From Selaginella moellendorffii (Eukaryota > Plantae > Lycopodiophyta): DNA of 64,000 nucleotides. The notes under the pieces were generated by a model. That model searched no databases. It was not told the origin of the DNA and saw only the letters and a list, made by a program, of their open reading frames with translations. Positions 6,001 to 25,630 of the stretch are shown here, piece by piece. Position numbers and translations under genes: made by a program. The stretch spans positions 434,001-498,000 of the forward strand of contig NW_003314350.1 in the NCBI RefSeq assembly GCF_000143415.4, written 5' to 3'. Numbering within the stretch: the stretch's first letter is position 1; each line of letters opens with the position of its first letter.

Positions 6001-6205
6001 TTCAAAGTCATGGTTTATGGTTAATATGCTTAATATAAGAACTTAACACATCTAATTTAAATACTTTGTCTAAGATAATTCAATTGCCATGGACACTTTT
6101 GCCTAGGAAAGGGCTACATACTCAAAAGTTGAAGAAACTTAATACTTATTGATGACCATGTTAAGGTACATGGACTAGCAAAGCCATGAGCTTGAGGGGA
6201 CATGC

Positions 6206-7143
6206 TTGCCTAATGCTCAAATTTTCATAGCTACATTCAAGAAAAGTTATAGCCTTGGAGAACGGAATAGCTCTTCTTTGGACATGAGGCTGGACTCCAA
6301 AGTGTTCATGGCAAGCTCTTTGATAGATCTGTACATGAAGTGTGGCACTATGGATGGAAAGTTTTCAGAGAGGACACCAGGGCGGGATATGGTTTTATGG
6401 ATGGCACTTCTGCTTGTCTACGTCTCAAATGGTGAAGAAGAGGGAGCTCTAGAGCTCGTCAAGTTTGTGGAGGTGGATGATGATGTGATCGGTCGACCAT
6501 TCCCTTGGGACTCAATCTCTGTGCGTGCTTGGGATCCAGAGGAAAATGGAGAGAGGCATGGCGTTCCACTTTCAAGCTTACCATGCCGGCTGGAATGACT
6601 ACGAGGTGGCTCGCGGCCTTGTGATGTACGTGAAGTGTGGGAGCATGGGGGATGCTCGCCGAGAGAGATGATGTCACAGCATGGAACTCGATGGTCTTGG
6701 GCTATGCCGAGAACAAGCAAGCAGCGCTGTGCTTGGAGCTCTTTCGAGAGATTCCTCCTCAAGTTTTGGACGCTCACAGATTGGCTGCTGCTCTCGAGGC
6801 TTGTGGAAGCCTGGCGTCTCTGGAACCGGGCAAAGCCACTCATGCTCTAGCTTGCCGCTTGGGGATGGAAGAATCTCTCATCGTTGGGACTAGTTTGGTT
6901 GACTTCTATGGCAAGTGTGGAAGCATGGTGGACGCTCGACTGGTTTTTGATGGGATCTTTCCCAAGAAGCTAGCGGCCTGGACAGCTTTCATGGAAGGCT
7001 ATGGCCGTCAAGGAAGCTCCAAGCTTGTGACGGAGCTTCTTTGTGGAATGGAAGAGGAGGGCTTTCGACCGGACGCTAAAACTCTGGCTAGCGTTATCAG
7101 CAAATGTGATTCCTTCCCAGATTATTCCTGGTGGAACCAATGA
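6206..7143 (+). pseudogene. PLS-class pentatricopeptide repeat gene fragment, frameshifted
   Basis: PPR motifs VFMASSLIDLYMKCG, MYVKCGSMGDARR, DVTAWNSMVLGYAEN, VGTSLVDFYGKCGSMVDARLVFD and GFRPDAKT are spread over different frames. No E/DYW domain is present. Confidence 0.85.
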
Positions 7144-7329
7144 ATTAAATGCCGCAGTAGACATGGTTAGCTCGATGGAAAGTGTTAGCAACGCTATGTT
7201 GGTGAGAATTATCCTAGATAGAAGGTGGAAGAATCTTCAGGTGGCATTCAAGCGTTTGATGGATTTGGATGAGTTTGATTCAGTGGGTTATGTACTATTT
7301 GCATCGAGCTATGATTAAGTGCAAATAAT

Positions 7330-8373
7330 TCACTTAGTTATTCTTTCTTCGTAAGAACGTGTCTTGCTCTGAATGGAGCGAGCGGCAAAGGTTAGAGCTC
7401 CAAGACCAATGGTGATAGCAATGGGGCCTCCGTACTCCAATGCCAAAGTCTGCCACATTCACGCAAGAATCGAGCATGGAGTAGCCAGCGAGTAGAGTGT
7501 GCTTCCGGCGATGTTGTAAAGAGCACGAACTGGGGCGAGCAGTGACTGGTATGCATATGGGAGGTATTCGCTTGCACCAAGAGCATTGAACAGAGAATCT
7601 AAGAACCATTCGCTGTGAACAGAGGCCACCACAAGAATGTCGTCCGAGAGTATCAAGGGGTTGTAGAGTCCCAGCTTGTCAACCTTTGAGATCTCTGCGT
7701 ATATCAAGATTGTGTTATTACAGAACATTAGGATGTGTGGTTTTTTGTACCTGTGATTGGTGAGGCTCCAGAGATTGTGGACAGGCTATCTCCAACTTTG
7801 AGATCAGCAGCTCGCTTGTAAATTGTCTCTCCTTTCGTATTAACTGGGACAAAATGACTGGTTGTAAGCTCCAAGGTGTTGGCTTTGGTCTTGACTTGCA
7901 CGAATTCAGAAACAACATCTAGATCCTTGTGACCAAATGCGTAGATATCCGAAAATGAGTTAATTCCAACAGCAACCTGTAGAAACTTATTAATCATATG
8001 AAGCAAAGTGGATTACTAGCTAGGATCTTGCCTTATCTCCAATCTTAAGTTCCTTCATGGTCTTCATTTCCCCACTGTACATATGAACCATTGCATCACC
8101 TAGATAGATATTGCATGTACTTAGCACGGTGTAATTTGTAAAGAATAACTTTATTACCTGGAAAGCAATCAGTGTTGTTTCTACATATTCCATTGTTACA
8201 TGTGAATTCTGCGCTGAAATATCAGCACTAGTGTTGCATTTCACTATATTAATAGCAAACACGGTGGAAAACAATCCAAGAAGAGAGATCACAGCATACA
8301 CAGCAGCTAGAGAAACTATTGCCTTTCAAGTATACTTAACGAAACACTAAGCTTATGAAGAATCATTGGCCAT
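7330..8373 (-). pseudogene. Hedgehog-type Hog (Hint autoprocessing) domain gene with signal peptide and short Cys-rich N-terminal peptide; frameshifted
   Basis: Removing introns 8100-8157 (GT-AG), 7977-8031 (GC-AG) and 7695-7750 (GT-AG) gives D-CFPGDAMVHMYSGEMKTMKELKIGDKVAVG...FSDIYAFGHK...LELTTSHFV...KRAADLKVGD...GLYNPLILSDDILVVASVHS, i.e. Hint N1, TxxH and C-terminal blocks. Frameshifts near 8220, 7500 and 7445. The start (ATG 8373 plus a weak GC-donor intron 8323-8370) is tentative. Confidence 0.85.
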
Positions 8374-8585: not shown

Positions 8586-11500
8586 TCACTGGTTCCCTCT
8601 ACCACCCCTGCCTCTGCCGCCCTTGTTAGTTTTCGGTGCTCGGACAACCCGGTTCCTCAGTGCTTCTGGGGACGAAGGAGACGCAGCACTCCGCTTTCTC
8701 TCCTTAGCTCTTTCCCGGGCCCTCTCGTTCAAGTTTATAGTGGTGCTTGTCACTGCTGGTGCTGGTGGTGTTCCTCCCGACAATCCTCCTGTTGGTGGTG
8801 TTGTTACTCCTCCTGTTACTGCTCCTGGGTTTGGTCTTTCAGCTTCAGCCATTCCGGCAGCCTCTCCTTGCTCGAAAGAAGTCTCGGCCGCCATCTCGGT
8901 GGAAGTCGTCTCCTGACCTGCGTCTTTGCCAAGCTCTTCCTGCTCTTTGACGTCTTCCATCTCAAACTCTCCTTCTGTTCCAGCCTCCTCCACAGTTCCA
9001 AGTGAAATCTCGCCGTCTTCCACGTCTAGACTCATCCCGTTGTCGTTCTCGTTACCCGTCGCTTCTCCTGCCTCTGTTGTCTCCTTTTGCTCCGGTTCCA
9101 CGTCCACTTGGAACTCGAACATTACAGGCGACTTCGGCTCAGAGATCTCAATGACTGGCTCGTCCGCTGTCCCGGAAGAACTTCCCTGCGCTAGCTGCAG
9201 CTCTGGCGACTTCTCCTTGAGCTTGCTGCCACTTCCATCAAAGTCATCTAGCAAAGACTCCGGACGAGAGAAACGGACCCGCCTCTGAGGAGCGGCAATG
9301 TCTGCGGCAAGATCAGCGCCCTCCAGCGACGGTAACTCCTGCTGCTCTTCATCAAGTTCCTGGAGCTTTGGTTCCTCCACTGCAGTCGTAGTAGCAGCGT
9401 CCACTTCTGGCTCTGTGGCTGGCTCGTCGTTCCTGGCCTTCTTTAAAGGTGGCAAGACTTCGTTTCTAGAGTCTTGCTGCTGTATGTTCTCGGTGTCCAA
9501 GCTCTCTGACGACGTTCTCTTGTGACCAGCAGGCACCGCAATCTCCATAGGTATTGCCACTAGTGCGTTCATGTCATTCTCCACCACCGCGTCAGGAACT
9601 CGAGCAGTCTCGCCCTCGGCCTCGGAAGTCCCTTCGCCAGCCGCGTCCAACGAGGATTCCACAGCTTCCGCTGCAGAGTCGGATTGGCTGGAAGTCTCCA
9701 TCCTAGGCCGGATTATACGCCTCCCAGAGCGACGAGTTTGGGTTTGGAATTTCTGGAACACACAAACGCAATTGAGAATGCCTTCAACTTAAAAATAACG
9801 TGTACCTCTTTCTCGATGATACTTGCACGAAGCGCTTGCATTGCCCTCAACTTATCATCCAGAATAGGTGCTGATGGCGGCCGTTGTACAGCTCTTGGGA
9901 ACGGAACCGACGGCCTCACTATGCTTAGATGCATGGGGACTGGAGGAGGAGTCGGAGTCGGAGTTGGAGCCGGAGCCGGAGCCGGAGCCGGAGCTGGAGC
10001 CGAAGCCGGAGCTAGCACAGCCGGAGGAGGCACGTTGGCAACTGGTGGTGTTGTAGAAGTTTCGTGCTCAGGGGCTGCGACAACTGGTGCTGGAGTAAGC
10101 TCGGCAGCCATATCATTCAGTTGTTCAACTGTCGCAGAAAAAGTTTTAGAGCTCGCCTCCGCGTTTATGATGGTGGTGCTAGTCTCAGCTCCTTGGATTT
10201 GCTGCAACTGTATCACGGCATTCACGAGACCTGGATAAGTAAGAAAAATTACCTGTCGTAGTTGCTCGTTTTCTTGTTTCACTGCCTGCAGGTCTTCGAG
10301 AAATCGTTGTTTTTCCTGAAAACCACTATGAGCGTTCAGCTGTGGAGAAGAGCAGCTTACCGTGGTTGCTTTTTGCAGCAGCTCCATCAAAGCCGTCCTG
10401 TCTTTATCGATTTTAGATTTCGATTTATCCCTTTCTTTCTCCAAGGTTTTCTCGAGCGTCTAGACAAGAAAAATGTTAAAACACAACAGTAGGAAAAGGA
10501 AAGTAACCCACTTGAATTCTTGAGTCTTTCTCGATCGCCTCTCGTTGAGCTAGCTCGTAACGTGCAACGTTTTCTCTTTGAGCTTGTTCTAACCGCAATG
10601 CAGACTCCTTTTGGCATGCCTCGAGCGCTTCTTGATGCACCGGCAACTTGCCGGACTTGAGTTCTTCAATTTCTTTTTGCATCACTTCTCTGTCCTTCTC
10701 ATATTTCCGCTGTTTCATCAAGACTTGGGTCAAAGAAATCAGGCAAGGTGAGCCTCACCTTCGTTTGGGTCAAGATCTTCCTGTTTCTCTCGACTTCGGC
10801 TCTCAGAGACGCCTGAAGAAACATATCAGTTAACGCCAACCACATGACTTTCAAATCACTCACCTCTAATTTTACAGCATCTTGAAACCTTCGCTCTAAT
10901 TCTGCTTGAGTCTCGGTTCTTAGAGCAAGCTCCTGTTCATACTTTGCGATGGTTTCGCGCCACATCGACGTCTCTGAGCCAATTCGTTCCTGCTTTTGAC
11001 CATGTAAAGCCTGTTTGATGTAAAGTACGAAGTTATACCTGTGTCTGTACCAGCAAAGCCTTCACTCTTTCATAATCATCGACATCTAGAGACTTGTACT
11101 TCTCCAACATCTGTACCCCCACATCAATCGTAGTTTAAAAAACCGCAAGTACTAACCTGAGTACATCTTTGTTCCCAGCGACGAGTTTCGGCTTTTGAGA
11201 CTTCCACTTCTTGTGCACGGGCGTGAAGTTCGAGTTGCAATTCCGTTACAGTTCTTTTAAGGGATTCATTCTCCTCTTCAAGTTTTTGAAACCTCCCTTG
11301 CAATTCCTGAAAATACAGAAGTAAAAAAGGAGCCTGCAACATTGATAGCTTTACCTTATTCTCATCAAGGACTCTCTTAATTTCCTCCTGAAGCTGCCCA
11401 TTGTTGCCGCGCAAGATATTCGTCTCCATAACCTGTGAACTAAAGTTTAGTGTAGCAAGCGTAGCTTGAGCCAATACCTGTGCCTGAAGCGCCCGAAATT

Positions 11501-19598: not shown

Positions 19599-22500
19599 AT
19601 GGATCTCCGGTTCCCTTACTCTCCGGCGGAGCTGGCGCGGGTCAAGCGCGTCCAGTTTGGGCTGATGAGCCCTGACGAAATTGTATGGATTCTCCTCGCC
19701 TTTGTAAAAGGGGGGAAAATTTCTGAGACTAATCCGTGCTTGTGGTGTTCTTGCAGCGGCAAATGTCCGTCTGTAAGATCGAGTCGAGCGAGACTTACGA
19801 CAGGGGTAAGCCAAAATCTGGCGGCCTCAGCGACCCGAGACTGGGAACGATTGACCGACAAACCAAGTGTGAGACTTGTGGCGGGAGTATGGCTGAGTGT
19901 CCTGGGCATTTTGGGCATTTAGAGCTTGCCAAGCCCATGTTTCACATCGGATTCCTCAAGACAGTACTGGCCCTCCTCCGCTGTGTGTGCTACAACTGCT
20001 CGCATATCCTAGCACTCGAGGTTTGTCGCGAAACGCTGCTACTTTGCTTTATCTTTGGTTTGGTGTGTTGACAGAACGATCACAAGTTCAAGCTCGCGAA
20101 AAAGGCGAAGAATCCCAAGCAGAGGCTCAAAAAGGTCTTAGAGTGCTGTAAGAACAAGCAGAAATGCGAGGGAAACAACAACGATATGGATGGCGAACAA
20201 GATGATCAAGAGGGCGAGCAGAAAGGCCACGGAGGTTGTGGAGCTCAGCAGCCGAAAATCACCATTGACGGGATGAAGATTATTGCCGAGTTCAAGGTTC
20301 CAAAAAAGAAAGGCGACGACCAGGATCAGTATTTGCCAGAGCCTGTCGAAAGAAAACAGCAACTTACTGCTGAAAGGGTGGGACACTTCTTTGTTAAGTG
20401 ATGGTTCCAACGTTCTATTCGTGCAGGTTCTGGGTATACTAAAGAGGATAAGTGACGAGGAATGCCGCATACTCGGTCTTGATCCTCAGTTTGCTCGTCC
20501 AGACTGGATGATTTTACAAGTTTTGCCCATTCCACCTCCACCCGTGAGGCCTTCTGTGATGATGGACAGCTCGGCCCGCAGTGAAGTAAGTTTACTTTTT
20601 TCTTGTTCAAGTTTACGTTTCTTACATTCCGTTTCTGCTGTTTTGTTCTTTTTTAGGACGACTTAACTCACCAACTTGCCATGATAATTCGGCACAATAA
20701 CAACCTGAAGCGGCAGGAGCAGAATGGTGCGCCGACACATATTATCAATGAGTTCACCCAGCTCTTGCAATTTCATATTGCGACATATTTCGATAATGAT
20801 CTTCCTGGCCAGCCAAGGGTACATGAAATGTTTGGCTTGCTTGTTACTTAATCAGAATGTGCAGGCAACACAACGCTCTGGTAGACCCATCAAATCCATC
20901 TGCCAACGCCTAAAGGCTAAAGAGGGACGGATTCGTGGGAACCTGATGGGCAAGCGTGTTGATTTTTCTGCTCGAACAGTTATCACCCCGGATCCGAATA
21001 TCAATATTGACGAGCTAGGAGTGCCATGGAGTATTGCGTTGAACTTGACTTATCCAGAAACTGTGACTCCATATAACCTCGAACGGTGAGCAATTCTTTC
21101 ATTGTGTTTATCTCTGAACTTTTTCCTTTTATGAACCAGATTGAAAGAGCTGGTGGAATATGGGCCGCATCCACCCCCTGGTAAAACAGGTGCAAAGTAT
21201 ATCATTAGAGAAGATGGTCAGCGTCTGGATCTAAGGTATCTCAAAAAGAGCAGTGATCGGCACTTGGAACTTGGCTACAAGGTAATGGATTTTTTGTCGC
21301 TGCAGTCTCTTATTTTTCTTGTTAATGTAGGTTGAGAGACACTTATGCGACGGCGATTTTGTGCTCTTTAACCGGCAGCCAAGTCTGCATAAAATGTCAA
21401 TCATGGGACACCGAATACGGATAATGCCTTACTCGACGTTTCGGCTTAATCTCTCCGTGACGAGTCCATACAATGCTGATTTTGATGGGGACGAGATGAA
21501 CATGCATGTGCCTCAGTCTTTCGAAACCAGGGCTGAGGTCTCAGAGCTCATGATCGTTCCCAAGTGTATAGTGTCTCCGCAGTCGAACAGACCCGTTATT
21601 GGAATCGTCCAGGACACACTTCTTGGGTGTCGAAAAGTAACCAAGAGGGATACTTTTATTGAAAAGGTAATTTTGTTGTCTTGCTGTCTGAAGCCTGGCA
21701 TTGATATCTTCTGTCTGCAGGACGTTTTCATGAACATCCTGATGTGGTGGGAAGATTTTGATGGGAAAGTGCCGACTCCAGCAATTGTCAAACCAAGGCC
21801 AATATGGACTGGAAAGCAGATTTTTAGTCTGATTATTCCCAAGCAAATCAATATGGTGCGAACTGCTGCCTGGCATAATGACAGTGAAACGGGCGATAAT
21901 TCTCCTGGTGACACGATGGTGCGCATCGAGAAGGGCGAACTCCTGACTGGCACACTCTGTAAAAAGACATTAGGAACATCGTCTGGGAGTTTGATTCACG
22001 TCATATGGTAAGCCTTTCTTTCTGTCTCGGAGTTTCACGTTAACTTTATACTTTTCAGGGAGGAAGTCGGGCCTGATGCTGCTCGCAAATTTTTGGGTCA
22101 TACACAGTGGCTTGTCAATTATTGGTTGCTGCAACACGGTTTCAGCATTGGTATTGGAGACACAATTGCTGACTCTGCAACCATGGAGAAGATTAATGAC
22201 ACTATCTTTAAGGCCAAGAACGAAGTGAAAGACCTGATTAAAATCGCGCAAGAGAAGCAGCTAGAGTCTCAGCCCGGTCGAACAATGATGGAGTCTTTTG
22301 AAAACAGAGTCAATCAGGTGAATTTTCCCCTCCTTTTTTATTCTTCTCGTACTAACTTATAATTATGCAGGTCCTTAACAGAGCTCGTGATGAAGCCGGA
22401 AGCAGTGCTCAGAAAAGCTTGTCTGAGAGCAACAACGTAAAAGCTATGGTGACCGCTGGATCGAAGGGCTCGTTCATCAACATATCCCAGATGATTGCTT

Positions 22501-25500
22501 GTGTGGGACAGCAGAACGTTGAAGGGAAACGAATTCCGTTCGGTTTCATCGACAGAACGCTCCCGCACTTTACAAAGGATGACTACGGCCCCGAGAGTAG
22601 GGGGTTCGTCGAAAATTCTTATCTACGGGGTCTCACACCGCAGGAGTTCTACTTTCACGCCATGGGAGGTCGAGAGGGTCTTATCGATACAGCAGTGAAG
22701 ACTTCGGAGACAGGTTACATCCAAAGACGTCTAGTGAAGGCAATGGAAGACGTGATGGTGAAATACGATGGCACAGTTCGGAATTCGCTGGGGGACGTTA
22801 TACAGTTCTTATACGGAGAAGATGGCATGGACGCGGTTTGGATTGAATCACAGCATCTCGACTCCATCAAAATGAAGAAGAAGAATTTTGATATGACTTA
22901 TAAGTTCGAGGTGGATAACGAGAACTGGAATCCGGACTACATGGCCAGCGACTGTGCAGAAGATATTAAGACCATCCAGGAGATTCGCAACGTGTTTGAT
23001 GCCGAGGTCCAGAAGCTTGAAGCCGATCGCAAGCAACTCGGTCTGGAGATTGCGACTTCTGGGGAGCCGCACTGGCCCTTGCCGGTCAATCTGAAGCGTC
23101 TCATTTGGAACGCGCAGAAGATTTTCAAGATTGAAATGAAGAAGCCATCGGACATGCATCCTATGGAGATTGTGGAGGCAGTGGACAAGCTGCAGGAGAA
23201 GCTACTGGTGGTGCCTGGTGACGACCCGATCAGTATCGAAGCTCAGAAGAATGCCACCTTGTTCTTCAACTGTCTACTTCGTAGCACGTTCGCCAGCAAG
23301 CGTGTTCTCAAGGAGTACAGGTTGACGAAGGAGGCCTTTGAGTGGGTCATTGGAGAGATCGAGACGCGGTTCTTGCAGTCACTGGTGGCACCCGGGGAGA
23401 TGATCGGGTGCGTGGCTGCTCAATCCATCGGCGAGCCGGCTACACAGATGACGCTGAATACTTTCCACTATGCTGGTGTCAGTGCGAAGAACGTCACTCT
23501 CGGTGTTCCCCGGCTGAGGGAGATTATTAACGTGGCCAAGAAGATCAAGACGCCGTCGCTGTATGTTCACTTGAAGCCTGAAGTAAGCAAGGAGAAGGAG
23601 AGGGCCAAGAATGTGCAGTGCGCGCTCGAGTACACGACGCTGAGAAGTGTCACGCAGGCGACGGAGATTTGGTATGATCCAGATCCGATGAGCACCATCA
23701 TTGAGGAGGACGTGGAGTTTGTCAAGTCTTACTACGAGATGCCAGACGAAGATGTCACTCCGGACAAGATCTCTCCCTGGCTACTGCGTATCGAGCTCAA
23801 TCGCGAGATGATGGTTGACAAGAAACTCAGCATGGCAGACATCGCCGAGAAGATCAACCTCGAGTTTGTGGACGACTTGACGTGCATCTTCAACGACGAC
23901 AACGCAGAGAAGCTGATCCTGCGGGTCCGGATCATGAATGACGACGTCAGCAAGGGTGGCGAAGTAGACCAGTCGGACGACGACGTCTTCCTGAAGAAGA
24001 TCGAGAGCAACATGCTCACGGAGATGGCGTTGCGAGGGATCCCTGACATCCACAAGGTGTTTATCAGGGAGCACAAAAGGCAGAGGTTTGACGAGCATGA
24101 GGGCTTCAAGACCGAGACCGAGTGGATGCTCGACACCGAGGGCGTCAACATGCTGGCTGTTATGTGCAACGAAGACGTGGACGCGACGAGGACGGTCAGC
24201 AACCATCTGATCGAAGTCATTGAGGTGCTGGGCATCGAGGCCGTCAGGCAAGCTCTCCTCAAGGAGCTCAGGGAAGTCATATCCTTCGACGGCTCCTACG
24301 TCAACTACAGGCACCTGGCCATCCTGTGCGACGTCATGACTTACCGGGGCCACCTCATGGCGATCACTCGCCACGGTATCAACCGCAACGACACGGGCCC
24401 GATGATGCGCTGCTCGTTCGAAGAGACGGTGGACATCCTCCTAGATGCGGCGGTGTTTGCCGAGGCGGACCATCTCAGGGGCGTCACCGAAAACATCATG
24501 CTCGGGCAGCTAGCTCCCATCGGGACGGGCGACTTCGGGCTGCTGCTCAACGACAAGATGCTGGAGCACGCGATCGAGCTGCAGCTCCCGAGCTACATGG
24601 AGACGGCCGACTTTGGCCTGGGGGGCGTGACTGGAACTCCGCACCACGAAGGGATGATGTCCCCGAGCTATCTGCTGAGTCCCAACTTGCGAGCCTCGCC
24701 GATCACGGACGCACAGTTTTCGCCGTATGTTGGTGGCATCACATTCTCTCCGGGAGCTTACAGCCCGCTTTCGCCAGCGTACAGCCCTGCGGGGTACAGC
24801 CCGGCTTCTCCAAACTACAGCCCCTCGTCGCCGACTTACAGTCCATCATCGCCAGCTTACAGTCCGGCCTCTCCGGCGTACAGCCCGAGCTCTCCAGGCT
24901 ACAGCCCGGCATCGCCCGCGTACTCTCCAACGAGTCCATCTTACAGTCCGACGTCGCCGAGCTACAGTCCCACTTCACCGTCCTACTCTCCAACCTCTCC
25001 ATCGTACTCTCCAACTTCGCCGTCTTACTCCCCGACCTCTCCATCGTACTCTCCAACCTCGCCATCTTACTCTCCGACGTCTCCTTCCTATTCTCCCACT
25101 TCGCCATCTTATTCTCCCACTTCTCCGTCCTACAGTCCCACTTCTCCCTCGTACTCTCCCACCTCGCCGTCCTACAGCCCGACGTCTCCCTCGTACTCCC
25201 CAACCTCGCCATCCTACTCTCCCACTTCGCCTTCTTACAGTCCGACGTCTCCGAGCTATAGCCCGACGTCCCCGAGCTACAGCCCGACCTCTCCGAGCTA
25301 CAGCCCGACGTCTCCGTCTTACAGCCCGACGTCACCGGCTTACAGCCCGACTTCTCCGTCTTACAGCCCGACGTCGCCTTCTTACAGCCCGACTTCTCCT
25401 TCCTACAGCCCGACTTCGCCTGCTTATAGTCCGACGTCGCCGGCATACAGTCCCTCGTCTCACACTTACAGTCCCAGCAGTCTCAAGTATAGCTCCGCGA

Positions 25501-25630
25501 GCCCAAGCTACAGGTAAGTTACAAGGATTCTTTTTCTTTTCTTCTCTCGATCTTTTTCTTTGTTAATGGTTTTTCTTGTGCTTGTTCCAGCCCGACCTCG
25601 CCCTCCTCGACGTACTCGCCTACGAGATGA
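19599..25630 (+). CDS. NRPB1: DNA-directed RNA polymerase II largest subunit
   Basis: [11 protein letters not shown] start, [13 protein letters not shown], catalytic [22 protein letters not shown] and the YSPTSPS CTD. The last intron is 25514-25590 and the stop TGA is at 25628-25630. Confidence 0.99.
24759..25624 (+). repeat. CTD heptad array, about 35 YSPTSPS-type repeats
   Basis: 21-nt periodic coding repeat with a central run of about 20 consensus heptads and degenerate ends. Confidence 0.97.

What the first reader, a model, noticed from the sequence alone, without database searches (positions are those of the whole stretch)
8168..8322. Cargo of the Hog precursor is a tiny secreted Cys-rich peptide: candidate sterol- or lipid-tagged plant peptide
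Seen: upstream of the cleavage Cys lie a hydrophobic signal peptide (AIVSLAAVYAVISLLGLFSTVFA) and only about 29 residues, INIVKCNTSAD[frameshift near 8220]FSAEFTCNNGICRNNTD. Three Cys are visible. The spacing suggests a fourth (ADC) at the frameshifted codon, which would give a C-x5-C-x6-C-x4-C two-disulfide mini-domain. Inference: signal cleavage plus Hint autoprocessing would release a roughly 3-kDa disulfide peptide, possibly esterified at its C-terminal Asp to a sterol or another nucleophile. That would apply Hedgehog-like maturation to a CRP-type signalling or defence peptide, which I do not know to be described in plants.
Basis: partly seen in the sequence, partly recalled or inferred. 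Interest (0 to 1): 0.8.

Follow-up and report, generated by a model that had tools for sequence, protein, structure and literature searches.

The report
Dead spikemoss Hog gene copy
The stretch is the front end of a broken, non-functional copy of a spikemoss (Selaginella moellendorffii) gene; intact sister genes elsewhere in the genome join a small secreted four-cysteine peptide to a Hedgehog-type self-cleaving domain, but this copy cannot make that product.

Summary
On the minus strand, 8322-8168 carries a hydrophobic leader, about 29 residues with three Cys split over two frames, then CFPG (Cys codon 8167-8165).

The window is Selaginella moellendorffii, and the gene is SELMODRAFT_427238 / LOC9638619. 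I aligned it with the other-haplotype copy (L001) and two intact tandem paralogues (L003; P0103, RefSeq 'warthog protein 6'). The intact cargo is 31-32 residues with spacing C-x5-C-x9-C-x4-C, in the same exon as the signal peptide and CFPG.

This copy is a pseudogene:
- The start codon is ATA instead of ATG.
- The Cys2 codon is destroyed.
- A 10-bp deletion shifts the frame.
- A 1-bp deletion leads to a premature TGA, followed by a 1-bp insertion and a lost stop codon.
- A 9-bp deletion in the Hint core is shared with the other haplotype, which has disabling lesions of its own.
- dN/dS between the two haplotypes is about 0.9.
- The neighbouring PPR fragment is decayed too.

Plant Hog genes were published in 2008, and the scan has already flagged the intact four-Cys genes on other DNA (s1-424050). 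Lipidation of the cargo remains untested. Interest for this locus is low.

The parts
8317..8319 (-). Former start codon. It reads ATA here and ATG in the sister haplotype and both intact paralogues. An in-frame stop lies upstream at 8328-8326.
   Evidence: column 94: A against G, G, G
8254..8319 (-). Remnant of the signal-peptide coding part (22 codons, ending V-F-A).
   Evidence: matches residues 1-22 of P0103
8168..8253 (-). Remnant of the four-Cys cargo. Cys1 is intact. The Cys2 codon is replaced (TGCA to ATTT at 8220-8217). A 10-bp deletion between 8213 and 8212 shifts the frame. Cys3 and Cys4 survive in the shifted frame. The last residue is Asp, where intact genes have Gly.
8158..8167 (-). 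C-F-P-(G): the nucleophilic Cys codon of the Hint domain (8167-8165) and the end of exon 1.
   Evidence: alignment to Hedgehog C-domain Cys1 made on P0103
8100..8157 (-). Intron 1 (GT-AG, 58 nt).
   Evidence: exon structure checked by translating L003b to P0103
8032..8099 (-). Exon 2, the N-terminal strands of the Hint domain.
   Evidence: Pfam Hint E 2.9e-4 on this exon alone
7977..8031 (-). Intron 2 (GC-AG, 55 nt), conserved in all four copies.
7751..7976 (-). Exon 3, the Hint core. It holds the F-G-H-K-D motif and the T-x-x-H motif (T-T-S-H here, T-A-G-H in intact genes).
   Evidence: Pfam Hint E 5.7e-4; phmmer hits
7695..7750 (-). Intron 3 (GT-AG, 56 nt).
7369..7694 (-). Exon 4: the end of Hint, the helical adduct/sterol-recognition-like region and the hydrophobic tail. 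It is broken in five places. A 9-bp deletion (V-N-N) lies between 7633 and 7632 and is shared with L001. A 1-bp deletion between 7490 and 7489 leads to a premature TGA at 7461-7459. There is a 1-bp insertion at 7438. The former stop TAG is now CAG (7371-7369). There is a 1-bp insertion at 7365.
6191..7315 (+). 5'-truncated, frame-shifted fragment of a PPR gene. It was copied together with the Hog gene from the Hog-PPR locus type seen in L003.

Best explanation
Window 7369-8319 (minus strand) is a decayed duplicate (pseudogene) of a Selaginella moellendorffii Hog gene of the four-Cys-cargo subfamily. A block of about 2.2 kb, holding a Hog gene and the 3' part of its neighbouring PPR gene, was copied next to the nucleoprotein-TPR gene.

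The copy evolved under constraint for a while. It then acquired a 9-bp deletion in the Hint core and a Gly-to-Asp change at the cleavage site. Since then it has drifted neutrally, collecting independent disabling lesions on each haplotype.

The window's haplotype has no start codon, no Cys2 codon, a 10-bp frameshift in the cargo, a premature stop and a lost stop codon. It therefore yields no secreted peptide and no working autoprocessing domain. All of this is shown by the alignments.

The following applies to the intact sisters and is inferred. The signal peptide takes the precursor into the ER. The Hint Cys attacks the preceding Gly carbonyl to form a thioester. A nucleophile (water, a sterol or another lipid) then resolves the thioester and releases the 31-32-residue, two-disulfide peptide. 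The Hint-plus-helical domain stays on the membrane through its C-terminal hydrophobic tail.
For: Identity of the gene:
- The annotated product P0001 (SELMODRAFT_427238) is 100% identical to exon 3, and its locus L002 aligns to the window without a difference.

Lesions:
- The four-way DNA alignment, with two intact paralogues as reference, places each lesion.
- Under one shared four-exon structure, L003a and L003b translate to full 266- and 265-residue proteins (L003b equals P0103). The window and L001 hit stops.

Selection:
- dN/dS between window and L001 is 0.9 overall and 0.8 in the Hint part.
- dN/dS is 0.25-0.3 between this locus and L003.

Allelic status:
- The flanking TPR gene differs by 0.6-1.9% between the two haplotypes.
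- The Hog/PPR block differs by 2.2-3.5% with many indels.

Neighbour:
- The co-duplicated PPR piece is truncated and frame-shifted.

Family mechanism, tested on P0103:
- Pfam Hint scores E 2.1e-26.
- The AlphaFold model has mean pLDDT 85. Its best structural matches are the Hedgehog C-domain entries 6TYY and 1AT0 (TM 0.86, rmsd 2.1-2.2 A).
- Cys1 and T-x-x-H align with Hedgehog.
- His95 at the Hedgehog general-base position is invariant in 53 relatives.
Against: - Neither the lesions nor the lack of expression is confirmed independently of this assembly.
- RefSeq still carries a 165-residue model for the locus (P0001).
- Exons 2 and 3 are open, and most Hint residues are intact.
- dN/dS rests on only about 30 substitutions.
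Confidence: 0.9

Rival explanations
1. The gene is functional. On this view the frameshift and other breaks are assembly or sequencing errors, and the locus really encodes a secreted four-Cys peptide fused to a working Hog domain.
For: The intact paralogues have exactly this architecture. Exons 2 and 3 and the CFPG codons are open in the window.
Against: At least seven separate lesions of different kinds would all have to be errors: a point change in the start codon, a 4-nt substitution, a 10-bp and a 9-bp deletion, two 1-bp indels and a stop-codon change. The second haplotype carries the same 9-bp deletion plus different disabling lesions. dN/dS between the haplotypes is about 0.9. The adjacent duplicated PPR piece is also broken.
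Confidence: 0.04
2. The locus is expressed as a truncated product or a non-coding RNA with a residual role. One candidate is the annotated 165-residue Hint-only protein, which starts at the internal ATG at 8192 and skips exon 2.
For: A database model of this form exists (P0001). The splice sites of introns 1 to 3 are intact in the window.
Against: That model lacks a signal peptide, the catalytic Cys and the first Hint strands. It carries the V-N-N deletion and ends at the premature TGA, so it could not fold or act as a Hint domain. No expression data support it. Substitutions between the haplotypes look neutral.
Confidence: 0.05

Closest known systems
Selaginella moellendorffii 'warthog protein 6' genes: XP_024537580.1 (P0103), XP_024537579.1 (P0117), XP_024541370.1 (P0120) and the tandem copy L003a on GL377597.1
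   Same: 86-91% DNA identity. They share the four-exon structure, including the GC-AG intron 2, the signal peptide, the four-Cys cargo frame, the Hint domain, the helical region and the hydrophobic tail. A PPR gene is the neighbour in both cases.
   Different: These genes are intact and have Gly before the cleavage Cys. The window copy has lost its start codon, Cys2, reading frame, Hint-core V-N-N and stop codon.
Moss and Selaginella Hog genes of Burglin 2008 (PMC2362128): pSm Hog (ESTs DN839649, DN837769) and pPp Hog
   Same: The same Hint-plus-helical-region family with a signal peptide and a C-terminal hydrophobic tail. pSm Hog matches the P0003/P0107 type at about 55% identity to the four-Cys genes.
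   Different: pSm Hog has only four residues (T-N-T-S) between the leader and CFPG. pPp Hog, like P0111, has an N-terminal domain of about 240 residues. The four-Cys mini-cargo is not mentioned in that paper.
Animal Hedgehog C-terminal autoprocessing domain (Drosophila Hh-C; PDB 1AT0, 6TYY)
   Same: The Hint fold (TM 0.86), the Gly-Cys cleavage site with C-F, the T-x-x-H motif, and a helical region after Hint where Hedgehog has its sterol-recognition region.
   Different: There is no Hedge signalling domain. His replaces the general-base Asp46/Asp303; the engineered D46H variant of Hedgehog stays active with wider sterol tolerance (PMC9163320). Val replaces Cys143. A C-terminal hydrophobic tail is added. 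Sterol transfer has not been tested.
Nematode Hog proteins with very short N-terminal peptides (Xiphinema Shog1 and Shog2, Trichinella Xhog3; Burglin 2008)
   Same: A signal peptide, a predicted released peptide of only 15-34 residues, and a Hog domain.
   Different: A different lineage with unrelated cargo sequences and no four-Cys pattern reported. No direct comparison was made here.
Legume nodule-specific Cys-rich peptides (Pfam PF07127, late nodulin)
   Same: A signal peptide followed by a short peptide with C-x5-C ... C-x4-C spacing. P0103 gives a weak profile match (E 0.0019, 18.9 bits; cargo alone E 0.012).
   Different: The score is below the Pfam cut-off of 30.4 bits. The legume peptides are free-standing and never fused to Hint. 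The plant lineages are far apart, so convergence is the likelier explanation.

Membership tests
Hog proteins (Hedgehog-type Hint domain with adduct/sterol-recognition region) | Significant match to the Hint module (PF01079) and the Hint fold | tested here: met
   Window exons alone give only sub-threshold hits (E 2.9e-4 and 5.7e-4), but they are 92% identical to P0103. P0103 scores E 2.1e-26, and its model matches 1AT0 and 6TYY at TM 0.86.
Hog proteins (Hedgehog-type Hint domain with adduct/sterol-recognition region) | Nucleophilic Cys at the first Hint position (Gly-Cys-Phe) | tested here: inconclusive
   The Cys codon is present at 8167-8165, but it is preceded by Asp rather than Gly and is not in frame with any start codon. 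Intact paralogues have G-C-F-P-G.
Hog proteins (Hedgehog-type Hint domain with adduct/sterol-recognition region) | T-x-x-H motif and a general base (Asp46 in Hedgehog) | tested here: inconclusive
   T-x-x-H is kept (T-T-S-H in the window, T-A-G-H in intact genes). The Asp position is His in all 53 aligned relatives. His supports activity in the engineered D46H Hedgehog, but this has not been tested for plant proteins.
Hog proteins (Hedgehog-type Hint domain with adduct/sterol-recognition region) | Continuous open reading frame from signal peptide to C-terminal region | tested here: not met
   The window has ATA in place of ATG, a 10-bp and a 1-bp frameshift, a premature TGA at 7461-7459 and a 9-bp Hint-core deletion. 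It is a relic of the family, not a working member.
Hog proteins (Hedgehog-type Hint domain with adduct/sterol-recognition region) | Autocleavage with transfer of the N-terminal part to a sterol or other nucleophile | not testable with these tools
   This needs biochemistry. No experimental report for any plant Hog turned up in the paper library.
Hedgehog proper | N-terminal Hedge signalling domain | tested here: not met
   The cargo is only 31-32 residues. Pfam finds no Hedge-domain match in P0103 or P0099. The RefSeq names 'warthog' and 'indian hedgehog B' reflect the Hint domain only.
Late nodulin / NCR peptides (PF07127) | Profile score above the Pfam gathering threshold | tested here: not met
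   18.9 bits against a cut-off of 30.4.

The most novel reading that the evidence does not exclude
This concerns the intact sister genes (P0103, P0117, P0120, L003a and the P0099 type), not this locus. A land plant may use Hedgehog-style autoprocessing to attach a sterol or other lipid to the C-terminal Gly of a roughly 3-kDa two-disulfide secreted peptide, producing a membrane-tethered Cys-rich signalling or defence peptide. The natural His at the general-base position and the conserved helical region after Hint are compatible with this idea. Nothing here tests it.
Probability: 0.25. Interest if true: 0.75.

Novelty: new member of a known kind. Interest (0 to 1): 0.3.

Why it matters
For this locus the result is a clean-up. 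An annotated 'Hint domain-containing protein' (SELMODRAFT_427238 / LOC9638619) and its haplotype partner (SELMODRAFT_418906) are pseudogenes, and their database models are artefacts of reading around the lesions.

The comparison also has wider use. It recovers the true cargo of the subfamily, with spacing C-x5-C-x9-C-x4-C and a terminal Gly. It shows that the cargo evolves about six times faster than the Hint part while its cysteines are kept. And it shows that Selaginella Hog cargo ranges from 0-8 residues, through four-Cys and proline-rich peptides, to a domain of about 240 residues.

This points experimenters to the intact genes if they want to ask whether plants lipidate small peptides the Hedgehog way.

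Tried and rejected
- Rescuing the frame change with a tiny intron. Candidate GT...AG pairs of 29-54 nt around 8262-8209 give the wrong phase or a stop, and the sister copies show one continuous exon. Rejected.
- Free-standing relatives of the leader plus cargo. A word search with P0103:1-60 found no candidate, and the ESM Atlas feature search of residues 1-53 gave no usable hit. Both searches have low sensitivity for such short peptides.
- NCR / late-nodulin membership. The match is below threshold.
- EB-module match of the cargo (E 0.024). Treated as noise.
- Sequencing error as the explanation. Rejected because of the number and variety of lesions, the second haplotype and dN/dS.
- Spliced model. 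Searches used single exons by reference or database proteins. Exon columns were joined only inside local scripts, for translation and dN/dS.

Full report
**What is in the sequence.** The feature lies on the minus strand.
- From 8319 down to 8254, one frame reads a 22-residue hydrophobic leader ending V-F-A.
- The same frame continues through a first Cys to A-D at 8221.
- From about 8212, a different frame reads two more Cys, then R-N-N-T-D and C-F-P-G (Cys codon 8167-8165), ending at a GT donor (8157).
- Downstream lie three short introns: 8157-8100, 8031-7977 (GC-AG) and 7750-7695.
- Three further exons follow: 8099-8032, 7976-7751, and 7694 onward.
- Taken singly, exons 2 and 3 give weak Pfam Hint hits (E 2.9e-4 and 5.7e-4).

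**Identity.**
- A phmmer search with exon 3 alone (by reference) returned a 100% identical 165-residue protein, P0001. This is SELMODRAFT_427238 / LOC9638619 of Selaginella moellendorffii. Its locus L002 on GL377654.1 aligns to the window without a difference.
- That database model starts at an internal ATG (8192) and skips exon 2. It is a work-around, not a Hog precursor.
- The same 90% cluster holds P0094 (SELMODRAFT_418906). Its locus L001 (GL377605.1) is colinear with window 12365-5638.
- Between the two, the flanking nucleoprotein-TPR gene differs by 0.6-1.9%. The Hog/PPR block differs by 2.2-3.5% with many indels. L001 is therefore the other haplotype of the same locus.

**Intact relatives.**
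- A word search with the intact paralogue P0099 and the cluster look-ups show a Selaginella-specific expansion of Hog genes.
- The closest intact relatives are a tandem array on GL377597.1 (locus L003) and its haplotype partner: P0103, P0117, P0120 and copy L003a.
- Using one four-exon structure taken from the alignment, L003b translates exactly to P0103 (265 residues) and L003a to a full 266-residue protein.
- Their layout runs as follows:
  - a leader of 22 residues;
  - a cargo of 31-32 residues (P0103:23-53) with four Cys spaced C-x5-C-x9-C-x4-C and ending in Gly;
  - C-F-P-G and the Hint domain;
  - a helical region;
  - a C-terminal hydrophobic tail.
- The leader, cargo and CFPG lie in one exon.

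**Why this copy is dead.** The four-way DNA alignment places the lesions.

Specific to the window:
- ATG to ATA at 8319-8317, with an in-frame stop upstream at 8328-8326.
- TGCA to ATTT at 8220-8217, which removes the Cys2 codon.
- A 10-bp deletion between 8213 and 8212, causing a frameshift.
- A 1-bp deletion between 7490 and 7489, which leads to TGA at 7461-7459.
- A 1-bp insertion at 7438.
- The stop codon TAG changed to CAG at 7371-7369.
- A 1-bp insertion at 7365.

Shared by the window and L001:
- A 9-bp deletion (V-N-N) between 7633 and 7632. It removes the turn and the nearly invariant Val176 of a core Hint hairpin. That this is damaging is my inference.
- Gly to Asp immediately before the cleavage Cys.

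Specific to L001:
- Loss of the intron-1 acceptor.
- A 12-bp deletion at the start of exon 2.
- A 9-bp deletion in the cargo.
- A 7-bp deletion in exon 4.

Selection and context:
- A Nei-Gojobori count gives dN/dS 0.9 between the haplotypes (0.8 in the Hint part), against 0.25-0.3 between this locus and L003. The numbers are small (about 30 substitutions) but agree with the lesions.
- The block similar to L003 runs from 8438 to 6243.
- It includes a PPR fragment (6191-7315, plus strand) that covers only residues about 408-848 of the 849-residue L003 PPR protein, spread over three frames.

The simplest history is a partial segmental duplicate (Hog plus half a PPR gene) that later decayed on both haplotypes.

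**How the family probably works (inferred; tested only on intact P0103).**
- Pfam Hint scores E 2.1e-26.
- An AlphaFold2 model built on a 53-sequence alignment has mean pLDDT 85, above 90 through the Hint and helical parts and 56-71 in the leader, cargo and tail.
- Foldseek ranks the Drosophila Hedgehog C-domain first: 6TYY and 1AT0, TM 0.86, rmsd 2.1-2.2 A.
- Sequence alignment to these chains puts Cys54 on Hedgehog Cys1 and T-A-G-H on the T-x-x-H motif.
- His95 (F-G-H-K-D) falls on the general-base position. That position is Asp in wild-type Hedgehog and His in the 6TYY D46H variant.
- A review reports that D303H/D46H keeps cholesterolysis and widens sterol tolerance (PMC9163320).
- His95 is invariant in the 53 aligned relatives. 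Those relatives were collected with an exon that contains this motif, so this is not an independent sample.
- After the Hint domain the model has helices at 190-244, where Hedgehog has its sterol-recognition region, and a terminal hydrophobic helix at 249-264. That last helix could be a membrane anchor or a GPI signal.
- The likely course is ER entry, an N-to-S acyl shift at Gly53-Cys54, and release of the cargo by water or a lipid nucleophile. Which nucleophile acts is unknown.

**Cargo diversity.** Within S. moellendorffii, the segment between the leader and CFPG takes several forms:
- absent (P0006);
- 4-8 residues rich in N-glycosylation sequons (P0003, P0104, P0107, P0128);
- the four-Cys peptide (the P0103 type, and a 36-residue variant in P0099 that shares D-x-C-T-A);
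- a 27-70-residue proline-rich stretch (P0002, P0097, P0105, P0106);
- a domain of about 240 residues (P0111), shared with the Physcomitrella Hog of Burglin 2008.
Between the tandem copies L003a and L003b, cargo dN is 0.075 against 0.0125 for the rest, at similar dS, and all Cys are kept. P0103 shows a sub-threshold likeness to legume late-nodulin (NCR) peptides (E 0.0019, 18.9 bits against a cut-off of 30.4). I read this as convergence of layout, not membership.

**Comparison with what is known.**
- Burglin 2008 (PMC2362128) reported Hog genes in Physcomitrella and Selaginella with signal peptides. Its supplement lists an EST-supported S. moellendorffii Hog whose cargo is just T-N-T-S. The paper also discusses nematode Hogs that would release peptides of 15-34 residues.
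- I found no paper in the searchable library on the function of plant Hogs or on a four-Cys cargo.
- Earlier notes of this scan report the intact four-Cys genes and other decayed copies on other DNA of this genome (s1-424050, s1-418885, s1-382088, s1-405281). I confirmed that two tandem copies are intact. I could not check the notes' statement that these genes are transcribed.

**Limits.**
- The window matches the public assembly locus L002 with no difference across the aligned gene region, so the lesions are not independently verified.
Exons were searched singly by reference, and joins were made only in local scripts.

**Verdict.** The family is known, the mini-cargo is a modest new variant already flagged elsewhere in this scan, and lipidation remains an open and testable idea for the intact genes.

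Noticed in passing
window 6191-7315 (+): A 5'-truncated PPR gene fragment spread over three reading frames. It was copied together with the Hog gene from a Hog-PPR locus like L003. The annotated 163-168-residue PPR ORF here is probably also a pseudogene piece.
   Followed up: partly
window 7977-8031 (-): Intron 2 of the Hog gene uses a GC donor (AAG|GCAAG). It is conserved in all four copies compared. All three introns are only 55-58 nt long.
   Followed up: partly
L003 3019-3990 and 5001-5969; P0117, P0121, P0124 on the same scaffold: A tandem array of intact four-Cys-cargo Hog genes on GL377597.1. Several older database models (198-211 residues) skip the cargo or the first exons and look mis-annotated.
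   Followed up: partly
P0128, P0104, P0107 (other S. moellendorffii loci): The very short cargos (for example T-N-N-Q-N-N-T-G) share the first two and last four or five residues with the four-Cys cargo. They look like the four-Cys cargo with its Cys core deleted, or the reverse.
   Followed up: no
window 8586 to beyond 12365 (-): A nucleoprotein-TPR (Mlp1/Tpr-like) gene lies upstream of the Hog relic. Its last large exon (8586-9761) has no Pfam match, and a (GAGCCG)n repeat encoding Pro-Ala runs sits near 9940-10000.
   Followed up: no
window 22365-25517 (+): A long ORF encoding domains 4-7 and the C-terminal heptad repeats of the RNA polymerase II largest subunit (Pfam E down to 7.5e-107).
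   Followed up: partly
RefSeq names of P0099, P0103, P0002: Automatic names such as 'indian hedgehog B protein' and 'warthog protein 4/6' are misleading for these plant proteins. Only the Hint domain is shared with the animal proteins.
   Followed up: yes
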